Positions 8,708 through 37,517 of a DNA stretch of 64,000 nt are shown one piece after another. The DNA is taken from positions 372,001-436,000 of IMG/VR virus record IMGVR_UViG_3300005613_000001, one strand, 5' to 3'. The position numbers and the translations under genes were made by a program. Below the pieces are notes generated by a model. The model had not been told where the DNA came from. It searched no databases and was given only the letters and a program-made list of their open reading frames with translations. Every line of letters begins with the position of its first letter. The stretch's first letter is position 1.

Positions 8708-8962
8708 ATGGGATGTGGTTGTGGTGGATCATCAAGACGACCAACTCGCCGTCCGAGAGCGACTCAAAGATTCCAGGCAAAAAAGGTGGGTGGTGTAAGA
8801 CAAACTAATAATCCCAATGTCCCAAGACGACCCAAACAGGTTAAAGCGAAAACCAAAGCGTCTACGACACACCCCCAAAGTGAAACTAGCATCATGAAGC
8901 ATAGAGAAAAGATTAAGAAGCTTCGTGAAAAAGCTATTATGAATAAATTGGGGCGAAGGTAA
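8708..8962 (+). CDS. basic protein MGCGCGG...
   Basis: GAGGAG RBS; Arg/Lys-rich. Confidence 0.7.
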   Translation: MGCGCGGSSRRPTRRPRATQRFQAKKVGGVRQTNNPNVPRRPKQVKAKTKASTTHPQSETSIMKHREKIKKLREKAIMNKLGRR

Positions 8963-8963
8963 A

Positions 8964-9812
8964 TTAGTCATTACCCATATCAATTTTGTATGATCTATCT
9001 GGCATTTGCCACCTACGGGAATCTATGGGGGTATTGATCCTAATATTGACTAGATTCCATTGAAGCTTAACATCCTCATCATGCCATATAATTACAAGCT
9101 TTTGGGGCACACTTACGCCTCCAACTGTCGTCCATTCCTTGATTTCAGTGCTTGCAACCATTTGTCCGCGTTCAAACAAATAGTGCCCCATTATACGCTC
9201 TTTTTGGGGGTCAATTAAGGTCATTTTATTGACTAATTGACCCATTGTGTTCACTCTTCGCTCGGTTAAAGCCCAATATTTATCTGTTTTGCGTAAATCG
9301 GCTTTCTCATTAACCTTACCTAAACTGAGTGATTCCATAATCCACATAGGGTTGAATGGCGTTTTTAGTCTTGTTTTGTGAAGGTCTGTATGTAAAGCCC
9401 AATGTAAAGCAGGAGGGTTCATCCTCTTAGACCAAAACCAAAAGATATTATCATTAGACCCCAAATCAGACTCAGAGCCTAAAACTGAGCGGGTTTTCAT
9501 TCTGAACCGTATGGGCTTTTCATAGTCCAAATCCGCCCGCAACCGCACAATCCTCTTTCCATCATCAATTTGTATTTCAATATCACATCCGAAGTTTCTA
9601 ATTAAGTTGCTTCGCTCATTGATGTTAAGAATGACGCTTTCTACCTTATTTTCTTCTTCTGGGGCGATCTCTGATATGATGGGAGTATTAGCAAGATAAA
9701 GCTCATCTGTAACAGGTTTGCCACATATTTTAAGAAAGAACACAGTGGCTAAGGTGAAAATGAAAAGTCCGAAAGAAATGACTTTACCTTTAGTTTGATA
9801 AAAGCTCTTCAT
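8964..9812 (-). CDS. membrane-anchored exported protein, LolA-like fold suspected
   Basis: N-terminal TM; DLGSND.FWFW..RM.PPAL segment; start reassigned to MKSFYQ. Confidence 0.65.
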   Translation of the reverse strand: MKSFYQTKGKVISFGLFIFTLATVFFLKICGKPVTDELYLANTPIISEIAPEEENKVESVILNINERSNLIRNFGCDIEIQIDDGKRIVRLRADLDYEKPIRFRMKTRSVLGSESDLGSNDNIFWFWSKRMNPPALHWALHTDLHKTRLKTPFNPMWIMESLSLGKVNEKADLRKTDKYWALTERRVNTMGQLVNKMTLIDPQKERIMGHYLFERGQMVASTEIKEWTTVGGVSVPQKLVIIWHDEDVKLQWNLVNIRINTPIDSRRWQMPDRSYKIDMGND

Positions 9813-11408: not shown

Positions 11409-12305
11409 TTAAAGATAATCTCTAATTCCAGCATTTAAATCATACTTAGGAGCAAATCCCAAGATCTCTTGGGATTTGCTCATATTTGTTTCGATGTTAT
11501 TCTGAAATGTCTCTGGGTGGGGGTTCTTAACATATCTTAATTCAACACCACGCATATCCATACGCTCAAGCCTAAGATATTCATTCAATGCATCCAGCAC
11601 TTCTCTAAATGTATAAGGATTTCCTGTGGCGCAATTGAATATTCCTGATCCTTCAAAGTGCATAGCTAACATATTTGCTTCTACTACATCTTTTACATAA
11701 ATCCATTCTCTTCTTTGGTCGCCATATTCAAACAAGCAAACTTCTTCGCCTCTTTTTATTTTATTTGCTAACTGGGTTACCATGCTGGCTCTGCGTCCTT
11801 TGTGTTCCTCCCCAGGACCGTAGACATTGCAATACCTTAGCCCAACAACATTCATGTCATATTTCTTAGCAAAGTCCATTGCATATTGGTCAAATCGCAA
11901 TTTTGAAATAGCATACGCATTAAGAGGCTCTGGTTCGGAATCCTCAGTAAAGGGCACCTGACCGTTACCATAAACAGCGGTGGATGATGCATAAACAAGT
12001 TGCTTACATTCACTGTGATGAAGTAATGCTAAAAACAAATCACAAGAGGCGTAAAAATTAGCCCTCATCATCTGTTCGTAATTAGGATCGAGTGTATTAT
12101 TATTAGCAGCTTGGTGGAAAAGAACATCTACTTTCTCAAGTTCTCGCCAATCGATACCATTTAAACAATGAGGTATAAATTTTGTTCCTTCGGGTATTCG
12201 CTCGGGACAACTTCCCGTTACCATTACCTCATGACCTTGATCCAAAAGAGTGCGGGCAATATGGGAGCCCACAAATCCCGTTCCACCAGTTACAAGAGCG
12301 ATCAT
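11409..12305 (-). CDS. NAD-dependent epimerase/dehydratase (HldD/RfaD-like)
   Basis: TGGTGFVG, YASSTAVYG, YAISK, RYCNVYGP.E.HKG. Confidence 0.9.
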   Translation of the reverse strand: MIALVTGGTGFVGSHIARTLLDQGHEVMVTGSCPERIPEGTKFIPHCLNGIDWRELEKVDVLFHQAANNNTLDPNYEQMMRANFYASCDLFLALLHHSECKQLVYASSTAVYGNGQVPFTEDSEPEPLNAYAISKLRFDQYAMDFAKKYDMNVVGLRYCNVYGPGEEHKGRRASMVTQLANKIKRGEEVCLFEYGDQRREWIYVKDVVEANMLAMHFEGSGIFNCATGNPYTFREVLDALNEYLRLERMDMRGVELRYVKNPHPETFQNNIETNMSKSQEILGFAPKYDLNAGIRDYL

Positions 12306-12317
12306 TTTGAAGACCTT

Positions 12318-30164: not shown

Positions 30165-30199
30165 GTTTCGACCCACACGGTCAGATAAATTCTGCCATG
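30165..30199 (-). CRISPR. solitary degenerate repeat overlapping the cas3 stop
   Basis: hairpin CATGG-CAGA/TCTG-A-CCGTG followed by TGGGTCGAAAC (repeat handle is TGGGTTGAAAC). Confidence 0.55.
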
Positions 30200-32388
30200 T
30201 AACCTAGAAAGTTAGGATCATAGGCACCCTTCCAAATGTAAAATCCATCTTCATTTTTTACAACAGGACACTTATCTTTCTTTTTCTCATATATCTGAAC
30301 GCTGTTTCTTGTAATCTCGTTTCGTGAAAGTGGATCATTCTTTAGAACGCTAGGATCAATAACTGCTGCAAATTTCAATGCGTTAATAACACGAAAATAC
30401 TCACCCACAGTTCTTAATTTCCCAGCATTCTCAGCCCGAACCAATTCTTCAATTGTGTACCCTTTGTCGTCGGGCTCTCTTTTTATCTTCTTTTCTTTTT
30501 CTGTTTCTAGTTGTAATTTGGCCGCTGCATCACACATTTCCGGGCCATAAGTCCCCTTTTTGTAAAAATCTCTGAATATCTTCGCAGGAATTTGGAATTC
30601 AGGATTTTCTGTAAATGGGTTGAAAGGATTAAAATTATCTTCATCTTGCTGTTCAAGTTCAAATATCTGAATAAAAGAATCTCTATAAAGACCTTCCCTG
30701 TTAATCCTTCCTTTGCACTGATGAGCATTATCTAGCCCTGCAATTTCTCTAAATCCATAACGGAATGAGAAATCAATTCCACACTCTACGCAAGATGTGG
30801 CTACAAGAATCCAATCATCATTCGGGCGATTTTTTAATTTCTTTATCACTCTATCCAATATTGCTTGTCTATCTTTGGGAGTAAGACAAGTTGATAGGTG
30901 TTCGACCTCTTTGCCTTGTTCATATAATGTTTTGGCAACTATAGCTGCATTTTTGATTGTATTAAATACAGCTAATTTTGGACCTTGAGGCTTAGAAATC
31001 ATTCTGCAAACACTTTGCAACGTATGCTTCCAAGGAGAATACCTTATTTCCACTCTCCCATTCTCTCTCTCAAGTGTTTTTTTGCTCAATTTAGGAGGAA
31101 TGATAGAGGGAACTTCAAAATCAAAACCACTTAATTCCTTAAAATAAGCATCCTCCCAAGGTCTAATTAGTGAACCTGAAGAAAAGAGCACTTTGCACCC
31201 TAGATTTTCAACAAGATATTTAAGCGACTTTAGTGCTAAAGGCCAAAAAATCAGAGGTATTGAAATGTGGGATTCATCAATAATGATAAAAGATCCTGCG
31301 AAGTTATGCAGTTTCCTTAATTTTCTTGTCCTACAAGCCAATAAAGATTCAAAAAACTGTACTGCTGTTGTGCAAACAATGGGACAGCTACATGTTGTTG
31401 CTAGAGCTTTTGCCCGAATACCCCTTCCTACGTCCTCATCATCTTCTACTTGATGATGATATTCGCCTACTGTTTCTGGTCCCTCATTTGGAAGTAACAA
31501 TTTGCGATATGTGTTCACACTTTGTGATATAATAGAGCAAAATGGAGCCACATAAATTATTTTCCTTGGATTCTGTTTAAGGGCATAAGCCATTAAAGCC
31601 GTAGTTTTCCCTGTTCCCACTTCGCTAGGACAACAAACAACGGGAGCCTCAACAGGAGAATTTCTACAAGCCCCATATACCGATGCCCTTATTCTATTTC
31701 TATCGTTATTTTCACTTTCTTTTTGCAAATTGTGAATGTAAGTATCTAATATTTTAAGTCGTTTCTCGGCATCTAGTTCTAACTCCGATTCAATTACAAA
31801 ATTGCCATAATGTTGGGCTGTATCATGCCAATCTGCGTCTACCAAGCATGATAAAGCAATTCTCATTAAATTGGGTGAAAGTTTATTGGGCGAATCTCCT
31901 TGTATGTCTTTTATTGTCTTGCTATGCTTTTCAACTAGCGATGGCAACATTTCATCAAAATAATCGCAAACCATACCATCATAATCAACCCAAGGGGTTC
32001 TATCTCTAACTAAATTCTCATCTCTATAATCCACACCTGTTGGTGAGTAATCACAATAACCTCTATGGTGCGACACTACCATCCATGCTGCTGGTAAATG
32101 TTTTTCGGAGATAAGATGGGCCGTGCCCGCATCAACATGATTGGGCATCTTGCCATTTTTTTCTCCCCTTAGCACTATTTGGTTGTGTTTTCCAAGTTTG
32201 CCCAAATCATGCCATCTCGCGGCTTTTAAGACAATTAATGACAATGCCTCAAAGTCACTTTTGTTTAAATGCGGGCGTATTTTCTCTAAATTATATTCAC
32301 ATTTACGACAAACCCCTTCAATGTGAGAGGGGTATGTTTGAACCGGAATCCCACGCTCTATGTCTGCTGAATGTGCTAGGTATTCCAT
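30181..32388 (-). CDS. cas3: Cas3 HD nuclease-helicase
   Basis: AHS, WHDLGK, SHH, LVDADW; GTGKTT, IIDESH, GIDFS, Q..GRINREG. Confidence 0.95.
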   Translation of the reverse strand: MEYLAHSADIERGIPVQTYPSHIEGVCRKCEYNLEKIRPHLNKSDFEALSLIVLKAARWHDLGKLGKHNQIVLRGEKNGKMPNHVDAGTAHLISEKHLPAAWMVVSHHRGYCDYSPTGVDYRDENLVRDRTPWVDYDGMVCDYFDEMLPSLVEKHSKTIKDIQGDSPNKLSPNLMRIALSCLVDADWHDTAQHYGNFVIESELELDAEKRLKILDTYIHNLQKESENNDRNRIRASVYGACRNSPVEAPVVCCPSEVGTGKTTALMAYALKQNPRKIIYVAPFCSIISQSVNTYRKLLLPNEGPETVGEYHHQVEDDEDVGRGIRAKALATTCSCPIVCTTAVQFFESLLACRTRKLRKLHNFAGSFIIIDESHISIPLIFWPLALKSLKYLVENLGCKVLFSSGSLIRPWEDAYFKELSGFDFEVPSIIPPKLSKKTLERENGRVEIRYSPWKHTLQSVCRMISKPQGPKLAVFNTIKNAAIVAKTLYEQGKEVEHLSTCLTPKDRQAILDRVIKKLKNRPNDDWILVATSCVECGIDFSFRYGFREIAGLDNAHQCKGRINREGLYRDSFIQIFELEQQDEDNFNPFNPFTENPEFQIPAKIFRDFYKKGTYGPEMCDAAAKLQLETEKEKKIKREPDDKGYTIEELVRAENAGKLRTVGEYFRVINALKFAAVIDPSVLKNDPLSRNEITRNSVQIYEKKKDKCPVVKNEDGFYIWKGAYDPNFLGYMAEFI

Positions 32389-32406: not shown

Positions 32407-33587
32407 ATTTCAACCCACGCCATATCAAATGACGAACGCCTCTTGTTATTATCCGCCGCCTCCTCGCCAGTTTCAACCCACGCCATATTAAATGACGAAC
32501 TTGAGCAGGGAAGTGGCTTCCTTTGGTGAATGTTTCAACCCACGCCATATTAAATGACGACTTTCCCGTAGCACGCCGAAAGGATAGTATGGGTTTCAAC
32601 CCACGCCATATTAAATGACGACTTCTCCTGTTTCGGTTTCCTTGGCATTCCGCAGTTTCAACCCACGCCATATCAAATGACGATTGTAAGTAAGCTCCCG
32701 CGAATTATTCTCATCGTTTCAACCCACGCCATATCAATGACGATTGTTAGACGCAATCATTTTGTCGGTGAGTAGCCGCCGTTCGTCGTTTCAACCCACG
32801 CCATATCAAATGACGATTGTTACGTCGCAGAAAGCCTAACGGGATGTGGCTAACGTGTTTCAACCCACGCCATATCAAATGACGATTGTTAGACCCTCAT
32901 TCACGGGAGACTCTATAGTGCATCGTTTCAACCCACGCCATATCAAATGACGATTGTAAGTTGGAATAGATGCAGTCGCAGTCGTCGTTTCAACCCACGC
33001 CAAATGACGGTCGCTTATGTCCTGCTGGGTGTATCCACAATTGTTTCAACCCACGCCATATCAAATGACGATTGTTAGGTAAATGCTACTGGACAGGACG
33101 GATCTATGTCTATGACGGGTTTCAACCCACGCCAAATGACGATTGTTAGTCGGCAGCAATTTCCACCGCCTCCCATTTTGAGTTTCCGTTTCAACCCACG
33201 CCATATCAAATGACGATTGTTAGTACGGGGAATACACCACTTGTGTAGGTGTAAGCGTCGTTTCAACCCACGCCATATCAAATGACGATTGTTAGGATCG
33301 TATGAACAGGGACAAGAGCCAATCCCGCCTCGTTTCAACCCACGCCATATCAAATGACGATTGTTAGCCCCTCTAGCGTCTTTTACTTTGTGCTTTTGTC
33401 CGGTCAGTTTCAACCCACGCCATATCAAATGACGATTGTTAGCCGCCTCAAATACGCATCATTCAAGCCAGAGGTAACAGTTTCAACCCACGCCATATCA
33501 AATGACGATTGTTAGAAAATCTAATGCAAGCTCGCCACCACTCCCAAACGTGTTTCAACCCACGCCATATCAAATGACGATTGTTAG
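32407..33587 (-). CRISPR. type I-C CRISPR array, 18 repeats / 17 spacers
   Basis: consensus CTAACAATCGTCATTTGATATGGCGTGGGTTGAAAC (36 nt), stem CGTCAT/ATGGCG plus 11-nt tail; degenerates toward cas3. Confidence 0.98.
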
Positions 33588-33752
33588 GGCTTATGATTTA
33601 AGTCCTTAACACTAAAAGACTTATGAAGGTGTTTTCGAGAGGTATCAAAAACCACTTTCATTTTTGAGCTTCTTTTTAATTGTTTATCAATTTGCATCAC
33701 CGTAAGTGGTTCTCATTGAGCCACTTACGGTGATGCGAGTGGTGCGGGAGGT
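33588..33752 (-). promoter_or_regulatory. CRISPR leader
   Basis: adjacent to the best-conserved repeats; two TAAGT-N15-ACTTA inverted repeats; 16-bp perfect stem at 33694-33736. Confidence 0.8.
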
Positions 33753-34643
33753 TTATTTAGCACGGAACCCTTCGAATTGGTTCAAATCCTCCACTGGGAA
33801 ATCAAAATCTGGTTGTGAGAACGTGTAATCCTCCAAGGAGTGAGATGCCATAGTAGGATCATCCCCTATCCTCACGGGAGTTAAAGATTCCCAGAATTTT
33901 CGTTCATCAAAACTGCCCAGTGGATTTGTGTGGTCAGCCCACCAAGTATGAAGGACATTCAGTGACCCAGGCGGGCGAGAAGTTGATGTGGAGGATGTAA
34001 AGATGTGCTTCAAAACATGTTTGAATACTTCTACGTCCTCTTGCGTAGTAAAGGTCCGCGTGGCAAGATTCGGATTAACCGAAATTCTTGATACATACAC
34101 TCCATGTGTAATGTATTTCTTGGCTCGGGGAGCCAAATCCGATTCTTCTTGCCGCAATGGGAACCTCTTAGACAATGTGCCGCCATCAAGTTTATTTACT
34201 TTTGCCACCGAAATGGCATTTGATAGCACAACAGGCCCAGTAGCAATAAAGTCAAATTCCTTTTCTTCTTTCTTGCCTTGGATTGCTGTTGTTCCGAATA
34301 GTCTAACATCCCAATACCAATTACAAAAGGCTTCAATGTCCTCACTCAGTTTGGAAGCTAATTTTTTGGCTTCAACACCATCTGAAGCATCTTTAAACCC
34401 TCGCAGCATAGATTCAAAGACATGAAATCTATCGGGATTAATTTCCAATCTTTCTTGCAAATACTGAAAGACCGGCGATTTATGATCTACAAATAAATCC
34501 CGCAGTTTTCTTTTCAGAGAACAATCACTGGCCCAACCATAACCATCAGAGGTTACTCGGGGTTCCCCTTCCCAATCGGGATCGCCATTGGGGTTTCCAA
34601 GGTTACATTCAAAGACGAGCAGACCTGAACTTCTTTTAATCAT
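33753..34643 (-). CDS. cas7: Cas7 (Csd2), type I-C
   Basis: GNPNGDPD...PR, SLKRKLRD, WDVRLFG, TGPV. Confidence 0.95.
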   Translation of the reverse strand: MIKRSSGLLVFECNLGNPNGDPDWEGEPRVTSDGYGWASDCSLKRKLRDLFVDHKSPVFQYLQERLEINPDRFHVFESMLRGFKDASDGVEAKKLASKLSEDIEAFCNWYWDVRLFGTTAIQGKKEEKEFDFIATGPVVLSNAISVAKVNKLDGGTLSKRFPLRQEESDLAPRAKKYITHGVYVSRISVNPNLATRTFTTQEDVEVFKHVLKHIFTSSTSTSRPPGSLNVLHTWWADHTNPLGSFDERKFWESLTPVRIGDDPTMASHSLEDYTFSQPDFDFPVEDLNQFEGFRAK

Positions 34644-34644
34644 G

Positions 34645-35031
34645 TTACTCTCCGTTTTCTTGGGGTTTTCTGTATGAGTATCCGGCTGCTAAAAGCAATG
34701 ATGCTTGGTGTGACAAGCTAGTAGGAAGTTGCCCGTGGGCCGCTTCTGTCATTCTTGACAATAACTCTTCATAGATTCTTACTGAGAAGTAGCAATTATC
34801 ACTTTCCTTTCTTTTGTAGTTTTTCGCCCAATCCAAATACACATTAAAATTTCTTACGAAACTATCCATTCCGCTATCTGGATTGGATCGAATTCCATAA
34901 AGGCTTTTTCCGCCAATCAATGTGGAGGGCACACTTGCCCCACGGCACATGAAAAACGCTCGGTGTATAGCACTCGCCTCTGTAAGAAGCCTCCCTAAAA
35001 GAAATGCCCAATGATTTTCGTAATCTTCCAT
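34645..35031 (-). CDS. cas11: Cas11 small subunit from internal in-frame start within cas8c
   Basis: AAGAAAGG-N7-ATG before MEDYENHWAFLLGRLL; 128 aa; internal translation is established for I-C. Confidence 0.65.
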   Translation of the reverse strand: MEDYENHWAFLLGRLLTEASAIHRAFFMCRGASVPSTLIGGKSLYGIRSNPDSGMDSFVRNFNVYLDWAKNYKRKESDNCYFSVRIYEELLSRMTEAAHGQLPTSLSHQASLLLAAGYSYRKPQENGE

Positions 35032-36453
35032 TTTCAAGCCTTTCTTGTACAAGATTAAATGACCTAGAGGTAAAAGATGCCTTAATAAGTAAGGCGCGTT
35101 TTTGTAATTACATCTAAAGACCATAGGAGCTACATGGGTTGCATAGTGTCTTTCAAATTTAGCAATTGCAGCCGGTTCATTAAAGAACAAATCATGCGCA
35201 TCCCAAATGTTGAAGCCATAAGATTTAACACTTGTAAATTTATCCTCTGCTCCATTGTAATTCCAAGTGCAATTACAAGCATCTACTACATTTCGGAGAT
35301 TTGGGTAGGCAACCTGGAAAATACTTCTGCCGTTTTGTATTCCGGCTTTCCATTCATTGACCCCATTTAATATCTCTTCTGAAGTGGCTGATTTAGAATA
35401 AACAACCCTTCCCACTTTCTTCTGTCCCACTAATTCTAAAACGACAATCCGGCCTACAACATCTCGTTTCTTTTGTTCCCTCATCATTTTTATAAGAGAT
35501 GCTGCCGATTCTTGCCAATCTTCTAAGGTAACCTCACTTTTTGATTCTAATGTTGTTTGATTAGGGAGTATGCTGCTCAGCACCCAATGGGATTTCATCA
35601 CTTTGCCATCTATATTTGTAACGGAGACGCTGTACCAAAGCCCTCCAACTTCCCTTTTATTTTTCTTATCATAATAAGCTTGATGCTCTGGAGATAGAAT
35701 GAAGTCAATCGCCCTTTCGATTTTCCTTCGAGAAGTAATTCCCAAAACGCAGCTTTGAGTGGAATTTAATCCAAAACGCTCAAAACATTGGTTTTTTTCA
35801 AATTTTGAAAAATATTGAATTTGAATATTGCCGGGCTTAACTTCAAAACCCTTTTTATCACTTCCGAAATTAGAATTGCCTAGAATATCTTTTTTCTCAT
35901 CATCTGCTTGCGGACTTTCTAATTGCCCATCTTCTAATTCAAATAATCGTTGACTAATCTTGCGAAGACAAGTAAAGCTTTGAACAGGGCACGGATAGTC
36001 AGAAGGTTTATCTACTTCTAACGCCACATGGAGAGGCTTGTCTTGGTAATATTCTGATAGTTGTTCTATGAAAGCATTTACATCAATCTTTTCTAAATGC
36101 TCTGCCAATTGTTTAAGTGCTAACAATTCCTCTGAACCATCAAAAACTTCTTTGCTGATTTCTATTGTTGTTTGTATTCTTGCTTTAATTCTCTCTAGCT
36201 TTTTCTCCTCATCTTCATCTTTCTTAGGACCAAAAGACAGCCCTATTGCTTTGTTGCTTTTTTTGTAGAATCTAAGATTTCGCCAAGCGTCAAAATCATT
36301 AATTTCTACAATTCCCTTTGGGCCAATGCGAACTTCAATGGCCTTTTGATTGGGATTGGATTTTAATTCACGGTGCCACTGTTCTCCGTCCTGCTCGGGC
36401 GAGATGCCCCAAGATTCTAAACTATCACAAAAAGAGAGCAATTCGTTCAACAT
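34645..36453 (-). CDS. cas8c: Cas8c large subunit (divergent)
   Basis: position between cas5 and cas7; MLNEL start, WHRELK, C-terminal AFLLGRLL..GY. Confidence 0.8.
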   Translation of the reverse strand: MLNELLSFCDSLESWGISPEQDGEQWHRELKSNPNQKAIEVRIGPKGIVEINDFDAWRNLRFYKKSNKAIGLSFGPKKDEDEEKKLERIKARIQTTIEISKEVFDGSEELLALKQLAEHLEKIDVNAFIEQLSEYYQDKPLHVALEVDKPSDYPCPVQSFTCLRKISQRLFELEDGQLESPQADDEKKDILGNSNFGSDKKGFEVKPGNIQIQYFSKFEKNQCFERFGLNSTQSCVLGITSRRKIERAIDFILSPEHQAYYDKKNKREVGGLWYSVSVTNIDGKVMKSHWVLSSILPNQTTLESKSEVTLEDWQESAASLIKMMREQKKRDVVGRIVVLELVGQKKVGRVVYSKSATSEEILNGVNEWKAGIQNGRSIFQVAYPNLRNVVDACNCTWNYNGAEDKFTSVKSYGFNIWDAHDLFFNEPAAIAKFERHYATHVAPMVFRCNYKNAPYLLRHLLPLGHLILYKKGLKMEDYENHWAFLLGRLLTEASAIHRAFFMCRGASVPSTLIGGKSLYGIRSNPDSGMDSFVRNFNVYLDWAKNYKRKESDNCYFSVRIYEELLSRMTEAAHGQLPTSLSHQASLLLAAGYSYRKPQENGE

Positions 36454-37154: not shown

Positions 37155-37181
37155 CTTAAGTTCCTTTTATCCATTGAAAGT

Positions 37182-37415
37182 GTTTCAACCCACGTCATGT
37201 TAATGACGAATCCGCATGCTGCCGTCTGCCACTCGCATGACCTTCTTTCTTTCAACCCACGCCATACTAATGGCGATTGTTAATCTGAGCGACGATTGCT
37301 TGTAAGCCACAGCGCATGAGTTTCAATCCACGCCATATCAAATGACGATTGTTAGTCGCATATCACCCCTGTTGGTGGAGCCGCTGTTTTAACCCACGCC
37401 ATATCAAATGACGAT
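37182..37415 (-). CRISPR. mini-array, 4 divergent repeats / 3 spacers, upstream of cas5
   Basis: repeats at 37182, 37249, 37320, 37386; stems retained through stem-preserving substitutions. Confidence 0.92.
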
Positions 37416-37489
37416 CCACAGTACATTCATCGGCAAAATGACGACGATTGTGACCTACCACGTACAATTCCTTTTCCCCGTATTTTCCC

Positions 37490-37517
37490 ATAATAGCATA
37501 GGTCCATTGAAAGTAAA
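37490..37517 (-). promoter_or_regulatory. predicted promoter of mini-array/cas operon
   Basis: TTTACT-N16-(TG)TATTAT, same architecture as the promoters at 7280-7307 and 38912-38939. Confidence 0.65.

What the first reader, a model, noticed from the sequence alone, without database searches (positions are those of the whole stretch)
32407..33587. Old CRISPR units trimmed by different routes to a constant 33-35 nt handle-to-hairpin length
Seen: the seven leader-proximal units have 36-40 nt spacers plus 8 nt of repeat before the stem (44-48 nt). Seven of the ten distal units measure 33-35 nt. Five lost the CTAACAA(T) repeat head and keep 32-34 nt spacers. Two keep a variant head (CTTACAAT) but have 25- and 26-nt spacers. 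Stem and 11-nt handle are always retained. Inference: this is selection, not decay. Units appear to be acquired in a long format by a host Cas1-Cas2 and then shortened to the length typical of I-C Cascade, implying a mismatch between borrowed adaptation machinery and the phage effector.
Basis: partly seen in the sequence, partly recalled or inferred. Interest (0 to 1): 0.72.

Follow-up and report, generated by a model that had tools for sequence, protein, structure and literature searches.

The report
Phage CRISPR units shorten in 6-nt steps
In the CRISPR array of a 527-kb phage that has no spacer-acquisition genes, older units keep their hairpin and handle but have lost 6 or 12 nt of guide segment; four related phage arrays show the same lengths (33, 39, 45 nt), one Cas7 footprint apart, so the pattern looks like selection on crRNA length rather than plain decay.

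Summary
On the minus strand, 33587-32407, there are 18 repeats. The handle-to-next-hairpin distance is 44-48 nt in the seven newest units and 33,34,40,41,45,33,34,33,34,35 in the ten older ones. Three public records carry the identical array. No reads could be checked.

The array sits between cas7 and cas3 of a divergent type I-C-like system (cas5, a 602-aa ORF, cas7, array, cas3). The 527-kb phage has no cas1, cas2 or cas4.

Five arrays in all (this one and four next to related Cas7 genes, at most 49% identity) get shorter with age. Pooled, the distances peak at 33, 39 and 45 nt. The periodicity is 6.0 nt (0 of 5000 controls in each of three relatives). Hairpins in relatives are kept through paired changes.

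Best reading, about 50%: once a repeat is internal, its 8-nt head is dispensable. Deletions then shorten the guide segment, and only lengths that fit a whole number of Cas7 subunits persist, with 33 nt as the floor.

The "selection, different routes" idea is supported. The "borrowed host Cas1-Cas2" and "mismatch" ideas remain untested: no host array was found, and no protospacer beyond one probable chance hit.

Also found: a mini-array upstream of cas5 whose last handle is followed by 12 nt matching the operon's own promoter.

The parts
32407..33587 (-). CRISPR array: 18 repeats and 17 spacers, transcribed right to left. The leader-proximal repeat R1 is at 33587-33552; the terminal repeat R18 core is at 32434-32407.
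33043..33587 (-). Newest block, R1-R8. Full 36-nt repeats (8-nt head CTAACAAT, 6-bp hairpin, 11-nt handle), identical except for the R7 loop deletion. Spacers 36-40 nt; handle-to-hairpin 44-48 nt.
   Evidence: fold
32953..33042 (-). First two short units. S8 (33042-33010) is 33 nt and runs into headless R9 (core 33009-32987, 5-nt loop deletion). S9 (32986-32953) is 26 nt plus CTTACAAT, 34 nt in total.
32743..32924 (-). Intermediate units with heads kept: S10 40 nt (32+8), S11 41 nt (33+GTAACAAT), S12 45 nt (37+8).
32435..32715 (-). Oldest five units: S13 (25 + CTTACAAT = 33), then S14-S17 (34, 33, 34, 35 nt) running into headless repeats R15-R18. R15-17 share a loop G>A change.
33588..33752 (-). 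Leader between the cas7 stop and R1. It holds a 15-bp inverted repeat (about 33699-33737). No sigma-70 consensus promoter was found.
33753..34643 (-). cas7, 296 aa, Csd2-like.
   Evidence: PF05107 E=4.9e-40; TIGR02589 E=3.8e-36, below cutoff
34645..36453 (-). 602-aa ORF in the position of the large subunit (cas8c). No sequence match anywhere.
   Evidence: the same position in relatives holds ORFs of 582-647 aa
36447..37154 (-). cas5, 235 aa, Cas5d-like. This is the presumed pre-crRNA endonuclease.
   Evidence: PF09704 27.7 bits against a cutoff of 23; weak matches to type I-C-like Cas5 chains 8g9t, 8dex, 7kha
30181..32388 (-). cas3, 735 aa, HD nuclease plus helicase. It starts 19 nt after the terminal repeat.
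   Evidence: PF22590, PF00270; TIGR01587 and TIGR01596
37182..37413 (-). Mini-array of 4 degenerate repeats in the 5' leader of the cas operon. Handle-to-hairpin distances are 38, 44 and 40 nt.
37490..37517 (-). Promoter-like site (TTTACT, 16 nt, TG, TATTAT) upstream of the mini-array. Positions 37514-37503 are identical to the 12 nt that follow the last mini-array handle (37181-37170).

Best explanation
This is the crRNA array of a type I-C-like effector (Cas5, large subunit, Cas7, Cas3) carried by a huge phage with no adaptation genes.

New units enter at the leader end in a long format. The repeat is 36 nt: an 8-nt head, a 6-bp hairpin and an 11-nt handle. With a 36-40-nt spacer, 44-48 nt lie between one handle and the next hairpin. 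The head pairs with part of the handle, so the two ends of the repeat form a short inverted repeat. That is probably needed only while the repeat is the integration site.

Once a repeat is internal, deletions remove the head, the spacer's 3' part, or loop bases. Selection keeps the hairpin (the presumed Cas5 cleavage signal) and the handle. It also keeps only guide-segment lengths that fit a whole number of Cas7 subunits between the Cas5-bound handle and the hairpin. These lengths are 33 + 6n nt, with 33 as the floor.

Shown: the lengths, the three classes, the age trend, the conservation of hairpin and handle, and the absence of cas1, cas2 and cas4.

Inferred: that the short units arose in place by deletion, that the 6-nt step is the Cas7 footprint, that the head serves integration, and that a host integrase adds the spacers.
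For: Window:
- The lengths are exact.
- Head-bearing units have 25-26- and 32-33-nt spacers, while the seven newest spacers of the same array are 36-40 nt.

Relatives (Cas7 at most 49% identical, deep star-like clade):
- L094 newest 44-46; oldest eleven 33-35 or 39.
- L150: 45, 39 and 33 interleaved.
- L152: newest 36-40, older units mostly 33.
- L148: newest 42-46, older 34, 34, 34, 36, 29.
- L146, hand-read: mostly 33-35, then 28, 23, 23, 17.

Statistics:
- Length falls with position in all five arrays, rho -0.41 to -0.76.
- The pooled histogram (n=149) peaks at 33, 39 and 45, with troughs at 37 and 42.
- Rayleigh peak at 6.0-6.25 nt, reached by 0 of 5000 blurred resamples in each of L094, L150 and L152.
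- The 33 and 39 modes lie at the low edge of their classes, as a floor would give.

Other points:
- Old hairpins differ by paired changes such as CTCCA/TGGAG and CACCA/TGGTG: 36, 22 and 6 double changes against 10.9, 8.2 and 0.7 in shuffles.
- Paralogous units in L094 (units 36 and 38) differ by 4 nt in this segment.
- Head-handle pairing is seen here. By my reading of the repeats it also holds in L148, L094 and L098.
- Type I Cascades add or drop one Cas7 per 6 nt of spacer (PMC5159557, PMC5009729, PMC4937334).
Against: - In the window alone the 6-nt periodicity is not significant (777 of 5000 controls).
- The change from long to short is abrupt at S7/S8, as a change of acquisition regime would also give.
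- Repeat cores carry few substitutions, yet 9 of 10 old units would have lost 4-12 nt. This needs a high deletion rate or positive selection.
- No spacer was seen in both a long and a short form. The L152/L153 and L150/L151 pairs are identical in shared units.
- No credible protospacer was found, so which end was lost is unknown.
- A -3 spacer variant was among the altered-length E. coli I-E constructs (PMC5159557); if it interferes, the register is not strict there.
- Stem positions come from a folding rule that favours pairing. The shuffle control does not re-optimise, so it overstates the contrast.
- L098 newest units are 37-38 nt, off the 33+6n register.
Confidence: 0.5

Rival explanations
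1. Fossil record of changing acquisition. The short headless units were inserted as they are, by an integrase that made about 28-nt repeats and 33-nt spacers. A later integrase, for example from another host, cut 8 nt further into the leader and inserted 36-40-nt spacers. No trimming took place.
For: The boundary between S7 and S8 is sharp, and the oldest four repeats are all headless with 34, 33, 34, 35 nt. R15-17 share a loop variant, as expected for copies of an older first repeat. The phage has no integrase of its own. A cut at the stem start would leave the head in the leader and make every older repeat headless.
Against: It cannot give 25-26-nt or 32-33-nt spacers next to intact or one-mismatch heads, nor the same in L094 units 9, 14 and 18 and L148 units 10 and 12. 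It needs the same short-to-long switch independently in at least four lineages separated by 50% or more Cas7 divergence. It does not explain an intermediate class exactly 6 nt away, or the interleaved classes in L150. In L152, units 10 and 14 have the long hairpin but a 33-nt distance.
Confidence: 0.2
2. Chimeric array. Recombination joined pieces of arrays with different unit formats, and gene conversion between repeats then spread heads and loop variants.
For: Non-adjacent repeats share rare variants: R7 and R9 have the same 5-nt deletion, and R10 and R14 have the same CTTACAAT head. Block duplications of units occur in L148 and L094. The phage carries further repeat copies that could act as partners.
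Against: No second array with short units exists in this genome. Chimerism does not explain the 6-nt classes or the same old-short, new-long order in five arrays.
Confidence: 0.12
3. Neutral erosion. Trailer-end units are dead and simply lose bases through deletion bias. The clustering at 33-35 nt is chance.
For: Trailer-end degeneration of repeats is common (general knowledge). Loop deletions and a mutated terminal repeat are present. Units below 33 nt exist in relatives.
Against: The clustering has about a 0.15% chance under uniform loss. Three sharp classes recur in independent arrays. Handles and hairpins are kept, with paired changes in relatives.
Confidence: 0.1
4. Assembly artefact: the short units result from mis-joined reads across repeats.
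For: Arrays are hard to assemble. L153 may be a collapsed version of L152. No reads could be inspected.
Against: Three records from different pipelines are 100% identical over the array. The short units carry unique spacers and repeat variants, which a collapse of repeats would not create.
Confidence: 0.03

Closest known systems
Canonical type I-C CRISPR-Cas (Cas5d-processed crRNA: 11-nt 5' handle, 3' hairpin kept)
   Same: Cas7 of the Csd2 kind, a Cas5d-like Cas5, a fused HD-helicase Cas3, and no cas6 gene in the locus. The repeat is a hairpin followed by an 11-nt segment ending in GAAAC.
   Different: No cas1, cas2 or cas4. The large subunit is unrecognisable by sequence. Cas7 falls in a separate clade at 100/100 support. 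New repeats are 36 nt with an 8-nt head that pairs with the handle, and spacers are 36-40 nt. For I-C, spacers of 34-37 nt are given in PMC5159557; the 32-nt repeat length is from my own knowledge. The gene order is cas5-cas8-cas7-array-cas3.
Type I-C variant systems of huge phages (Al-Shayeb et al. 2020, PMC7162821)
   Same: Encoded by a huge phage, lacks Cas1 and Cas2, has no Cas6, and Cas5 is closest to Cas5d.
   Different: That paper describes a helicase in place of Cas3, whereas this Cas3 has an HD region. In the passages I read, the paper reports compact phage arrays (median six repeats) and nothing on unit length classes or age-related shortening.
Engineered altered-length Cascades in type I-E and I-Fv (PMC5159557, PMC5009729, PMC4937334, PMC6859484)
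   Same: These supply the mechanism invoked here. Cas7 binds crRNA in 6-nt steps. Spacers lengthened or shortened by multiples of 6 give complexes with more or fewer Cas7 subunits, and these can still interfere.
   Different: Those are laboratory constructs. PMC5159557 also notes that some organisms have spacers 5-6 nt longer than average. Here several length classes coexist inside one natural array and are ordered by age.
6-nt ladder of mature type III crRNAs (3' trimming set by the number of Csm3/Cmr4 subunits; from my own knowledge)
   Same: Guide lengths are quantised by the 6-nt footprint of a Cas7-family backbone.
   Different: In type III the ladder is made at the RNA level from one gene. 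Here the classes are written in the DNA.
Ordinary trailer-end degeneration of CRISPR repeats
   Same: The last repeat is mutated, and older repeats carry variants.
   Different: Ordinary degeneration is not known to keep hairpin and handle while cutting the unit period by a fixed amount. The searches found no such description.

Membership tests
Type I-C CRISPR-Cas | Cas7 of the Csd2 family | tested here: inconclusive
   PF05107 scores 138 bits, above its cutoff. TIGR02589 is the best NCBIfam hit, but 125 bits is below its cutoff of 182. In the tree it forms a clade apart from the canonical I-C Cas7 sequences used as outgroup.
Type I-C CRISPR-Cas | Cas5d acting as the pre-crRNA endonuclease, with no Cas6 | tested here: inconclusive
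   PF09704 scores 27.7 bits, above its cutoff of 23. PDB matches to type I-C-like Cas5 chains are weak. Catalytic residues were not checked. There is no cas6 in the locus, but the whole genome was not searched for Cas6.
Type I-C CRISPR-Cas | Cas8c large subunit | tested here: not met
   The 602-aa ORF in the expected position has no Pfam, NCBIfam or PDB sequence match. Its fold was not tested.
Type I-C CRISPR-Cas | Cas3 with an HD nuclease and a helicase | tested here: met
   PF22590, PF00270 and PF00271 are above their cutoffs. TIGR01596 (HD) scores 42.5 bits, just under its cutoff of 43.45.
Type I-C CRISPR-Cas | Adaptation module cas4-cas1-cas2 | tested here: not met
   No match to PF01867, PF01930 or PF09827 in the 527-kb genome, which CheckV rates 100% complete.
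Type I-C CRISPR-Cas | Repeat made of a hairpin followed by an 11-nt 5' handle ending ...GAAAC | tested here: met
   CGTCAT-TTGAT-ATGGCG followed by TGGGTTGAAAC. The cleavage site is inferred and was not mapped.
Huge-phage type I-C variant (PMC7162821) | Phage-borne; lacks Cas1 and Cas2; Cas5d-like Cas5; no Cas6 | tested here: met
   It differs from the published examples in having an HD-bearing Cas3.
CreR / crRNA-like regulatory mini-array (side finding) | Degenerate repeats next to cas genes, with a pseudo-spacer whose PAM-proximal part matches the cas promoter | tested here: met
   The 12 nt after the last mini-array handle equal 37514-37503, which overlaps the -35 box and is preceded by TTT. 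Repression was not tested.

The most novel reading that the evidence does not exclude
Natural CRISPR arrays of a Cas1-less phage type I-C-like family record a length ratchet. The crRNA guide segment enters at about 45 nt (39 in some lineages) and is cut down over evolutionary time in steps of one Cas7 footprint, to a hard floor of 33 nt. Each old unit is kept processable. If so, effector complexes of at least three stoichiometries coexist in one phage, and very old spacers stay under selection.
Probability: 0.45. Interest if true: 0.8.

Novelty: new variant of a known kind. Interest (0 to 1): 0.72.

Why it matters
That a type I backbone measures RNA in 6-nt steps is known from engineered crRNAs. 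Here the same ruler appears written into natural DNA, inside single arrays and ordered by age.

If this holds, three things follow:
- Old spacers in these phage arrays are still used, otherwise their length would not be policed.
- One effector accepts at least three guide lengths.
- The part of a repeat needed for integration (the head) can be told apart from the part needed for the crRNA (hairpin and handle).

It also gives a simple sequence-only test for selection on crRNA geometry, usable on other Cas1-less arrays. The family offers compact type I effectors with naturally variable guide length.

Tried and rejected
**Searches for the repeat**
- The exact 28-nt repeat core gave nothing in IMG/VR.
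- The 17-mer ATGGCGTGGGTTGAAAC gave only coding-sequence chance hits in IMG/VR (L001-L005).
- In GTDB species genomes it gave 28 single chance hits and no array.
- In metagenomes it found only the same phage. So no host array was found.

**Searches for relatives and protospacers**
- Megablast of the locus and blastn of the array against GenBank phages gave no match.
- A Cas7 single-sequence scan of IMG/VR gave nothing. The alignment-based scan gave only L098 and L099 as close relatives.
- Protospacers: nothing above chance in the phage's own genome or in any fetched locus.
- The newest spacer (S1) had no hit in IMG/VR.
- S9 hit one giant-virus MAG contig. The match is 20 of 23, with all three wobble positions mismatched and no extension. 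I judged it chance.

**Other checks**
- Sequencing runs: none was listed for the array or for cas7.
- Spacers of this array and of L094 are not homologous, so the shared pattern is not inherited.
- Mini-array spacers m2 and m3 have 11-14-nt matches around genome positions 327-331 kb. These lie inside ORFs and are near chance level, so I did not pursue them.
- Tandem Repeats Finder does not see the array.
- L095 and L096 contigs end at, or lack, an array.
- An automatic parse of L146 failed. Its lengths were read by hand and left out of the statistics.

Full report
**What is there.** The window is bases 372,001-436,000 of a 527,112-bp virus record that CheckV rates complete. On the minus strand the order is:
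- a promoter-like site (37517-37490);
- a 4-repeat mini-array (37413-37182);
- cas5 (37154-36447);
- a 602-aa ORF with no recognisable family (36453-34645);
- cas7 (34643-33753);
- a 165-nt leader;
- the array (33587-32407);
- cas3 (32388-30181).

Cas7 matches PF05107, and its best NCBIfam hit is the type I-C Csd2 model. Cas5 matches Cas5d. Cas3 has HD and helicase parts. The genome has no Cas1, Cas2 or Cas4. This is the kind of Cas1-less type I-C variant reported in huge phages (PMC7162821).

**The observation.** The repeat, read in the direction of transcription, has three parts: an 8-nt head (CTAACAAT), a hairpin (CGTCAT, a 5-nt loop, ATGGCG), and an 11-nt handle (TGGGTTGAAAC). The distance L from the end of one handle to the start of the next hairpin is 44,45,47,44,44,46,48 for the seven newest units. 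For the older ten it is 33,34,40,41,45,33,34,33,34,35 (same values from a constrained fold).

Five old repeats have no head. Two have CTTACAAT after spacers of only 26 and 25 nt. Two more keep a head after 32- and 33-nt spacers. Loop deletions of 5, 5 and 1 nt and a shared loop substitution also occur.

Under a uniform 0-20-nt loss, seven of ten values in one 3-nt window is a 0.15% event. Two other public records, from different assembly pipelines, carry the array without a single difference.

**Relatives.** The repeat itself occurs nowhere else in the searched collections. In particular, it was not found in any of 185,579 species genomes. Cas7, however, belongs to a sizeable family: 205 cluster representatives score below 1e-30. 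The family forms a clade apart from the canonical type I-C Cas7 sequences used as outgroup, with deep, star-like branches. The nearest relative is 49% identical.

Loci fetched through these proteins have the same gene order and no adaptation genes nearby. Their repeats follow the same plan of hairpin plus 11-nt handle, most with a short head. I measured L in the same way:
- L094 (64 repeats): 44-46 at the leader end, a mixed middle, and 33-35 or 39 for the oldest eleven.
- L150: 45, 39 and 33 interleaved.
- L152: 36-40 in the newest units, mostly 33 in the older ones.
- L148 (head CTCACAAT, the closest to the window): 42-46, then 36, 34, 29, 34.
- L146, read by hand: mostly 33-35, then 28, 23, 23, 17.

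**Statistics.** L falls with position in all five arrays (rho -0.41 to -0.76). Pooled (149 units), the histogram has sharp peaks at 33, 39 and 45 nt and almost nothing at 37 and 42. The Rayleigh periodogram peaks at 6.0 nt. None of 5000 blurred resamples reaches the observed value in L094, in L150 or in L152.

The window's 17 values alone are not significant for periodicity, but they sit in the same three classes. The 33 and 39 peaks lie at the lower edge of their classes.

All 29 newest units of four arrays are long-format: 42-48 nt here, in L094 and in L148, and 36-40 in L152. Short units are therefore not what is acquired today.

**Selection on the RNA parts.** In the relatives the old hairpins differ from the consensus by paired changes at the same place before the handle. 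There are 36, 22 and 6 double changes, against 10.9, 8.2 and 0.7 in shuffles. One caveat applies: the stem was located by a fold, and the shuffles were not refolded. The handle is kept throughout. In the window the repeats are too alike to show covariation.

**How it most likely works.** Three points are known from engineered type I-E and I-Fv complexes (PMC5159557, PMC5009729, PMC4937334):
- Cas7 binds crRNA in 6-nt steps.
- The crRNA length sets the number of Cas7 subunits.
- Complexes with more or fewer Cas7 subunits can still act.

I infer that in this family the segment between the Cas5-bound handle and the retained hairpin must span a whole number of Cas7 subunits. The allowed lengths are then 33 + 6n nt, with a little slack upward.

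The fold of the 36-nt repeat pairs the head with GUUG of the handle. By my reading of the repeats, the corresponding head and handle bases are also complementary in L148, L094 and L098. The head thus makes the repeat ends an inverted repeat, which is the sort of feature an integrase reads. It would be needed only in the leader-proximal repeat.

Once a repeat is internal, the head and the spacer's far end can be lost. Deletions accumulate, and only those that land on an allowed length persist. This explains the different routes to the same length, the intermediate class, the age trend, and the floor.

**Why not a change of integrase.** A shift of the leader-side cut by 8 nt would neatly give headless repeats and could change spacer length. 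It fits the sharp S7/S8 boundary. But it has four problems:
- It cannot give 25-33-nt spacers beside intact heads. These occur here, in L094 units 9, 14 and 18, and in L148 units 10 and 12.
- It cannot explain the interleaved classes of L150.
- It cannot explain L152 units that have the long hairpin but L = 33.
- It would have to happen in the same direction in at least four lineages that split long before any of these spacers was acquired.

**What remains weak.**
- No spacer has been seen in two lengths, and no credible protospacer was found.
- The number of deletions is high relative to the number of substitutions in the window's repeats.
- A -3 spacer variant was among the altered-length E. 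coli constructs (PMC5159557); if it interferes, the register is not strict there.
- L098 acquires at 37-38 nt, off the register.
- Where new spacers come from is unknown. L152 has seven more leader-end units than the otherwise identical L153. That may be acquisition, deletion or an assembly collapse.

**Side findings.**
- The 12 nt after the last mini-array handle (37181-37170) equal 37514-37503. That site overlaps the -35 box of the only promoter-like site upstream of the operon and is preceded by TTT. This is the design of CreR-type autorepression (10.1101/2023.03.10.532045; PMC10120712).
- The heptamer GAGGCGG occurs 354 times in the genome against about 16 expected. It is present in 4 of 17 spacers, always in the crRNA sense, against 0.3 expected.
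- L147 has units of 43 nt in which only a 12-16-nt handle-like repeat remains and I see no hairpin.

**Verdict.** The idea of selection by different routes is supported and generalised to a 6-nt register seen across a phage effector family. The ideas of a borrowed host integrase and a mismatch with the effector remain untested.

Noticed in passing
window 37170-37517 (minus strand): A 4-repeat degenerate mini-array lies between a promoter-like site and the cas5 start. The 12 nt after its last handle (ACTTTCAATGGA) are identical to a site overlapping the -35 box, which is preceded by TTT. This looks like a CreR-type self-repression circuit. The relatives checked (L094, L095, L146, L147, L150, L152) have no such mini-array before cas5; L098 has a single reverse-oriented repeat copy there.
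   Followed up: partly
own genome about 321,500-321,560, minus strand (outside the window): A solitary repeat copy (AACAATCGCCTTTATGGCGTGGGTTGAAAT) sits right behind a TTGAAA-N17-TATAAT promoter and is followed within about 150 nt by a terminator-like hairpin. It may be a stand-alone crRNA-like RNA. No target was found.
   Followed up: partly
whole genome; spacers S2, S4, S6, S17 (window 33479-33443, 33331-33296, 33187-33150, 32469-32435): The heptamer GAGGCGG occurs 354 times in 527 kb against about 16 expected, often in terminator stems. Four of 17 spacers contain it, all in the crRNA sense, against about 0.3 expected even for a donor with the same motif density. This hints that donors are kin phages, or that spacers against a conserved motif are retained.
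   Followed up: partly
L147:8980-9800: A related locus has units of 43-55 nt in which only a 12-16-nt handle-like repeat (GTGTGTTGAAAT) recurs and I see no hairpin. If this array is functional, processing there cannot depend on a repeat hairpin.
   Followed up: no
L152:9207-9680 versus L153:2602-2637: Two records of one phage are 100% identical over 9.9 kb, except that L152 has seven extra leader-proximal units with identical repeats. This may be recent acquisition, a deletion, or a collapse in the Logan assembly.
   Followed up: partly
window 33141-33119 and 33009-32987; 32960-32953 and 32690-32683: Non-adjacent repeats share rare variants. R7 and R9 have the same 5-nt loop deletion, and R10 and R14 have the same CTTACAAT head. 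This suggests recombination or gene conversion between repeats inside the array.
   Followed up: no
window 33587-33552 (any full repeat); also L148, L094, L098 repeats: The head of the 36-nt repeat is complementary to bases 4-7 of the handle (UAAC or CAAU with GUUG). By my reading the pairing is kept through different sequences in relatives: CAAU/AUUG, AAAU/AUUU, GUUU/GAAU.
   Followed up: partly
L098:9021-9518 and 11943-12310: This relative has two arrays flanking cas3, each behind a copy of the same roughly 60-nt leader. It also has a reverse-oriented repeat copy upstream of cas5.
   Followed up: no
L148:2190-2650; L094 units 36 and 38 (about 8892-9084): Blocks of repeat-spacer units are duplicated and then diverge, so these arrays also grow by duplication. 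The L094 pair differs by 4 nt in the guide segment.
   Followed up: partly
L154:6065-6087: The first 23 nt of spacer S9 match a giant-virus MAG contig at all positions except 6, 12 and 18. The match does not extend and lies inside a 2396-aa ORF. I treated it as chance.
   Followed up: yes
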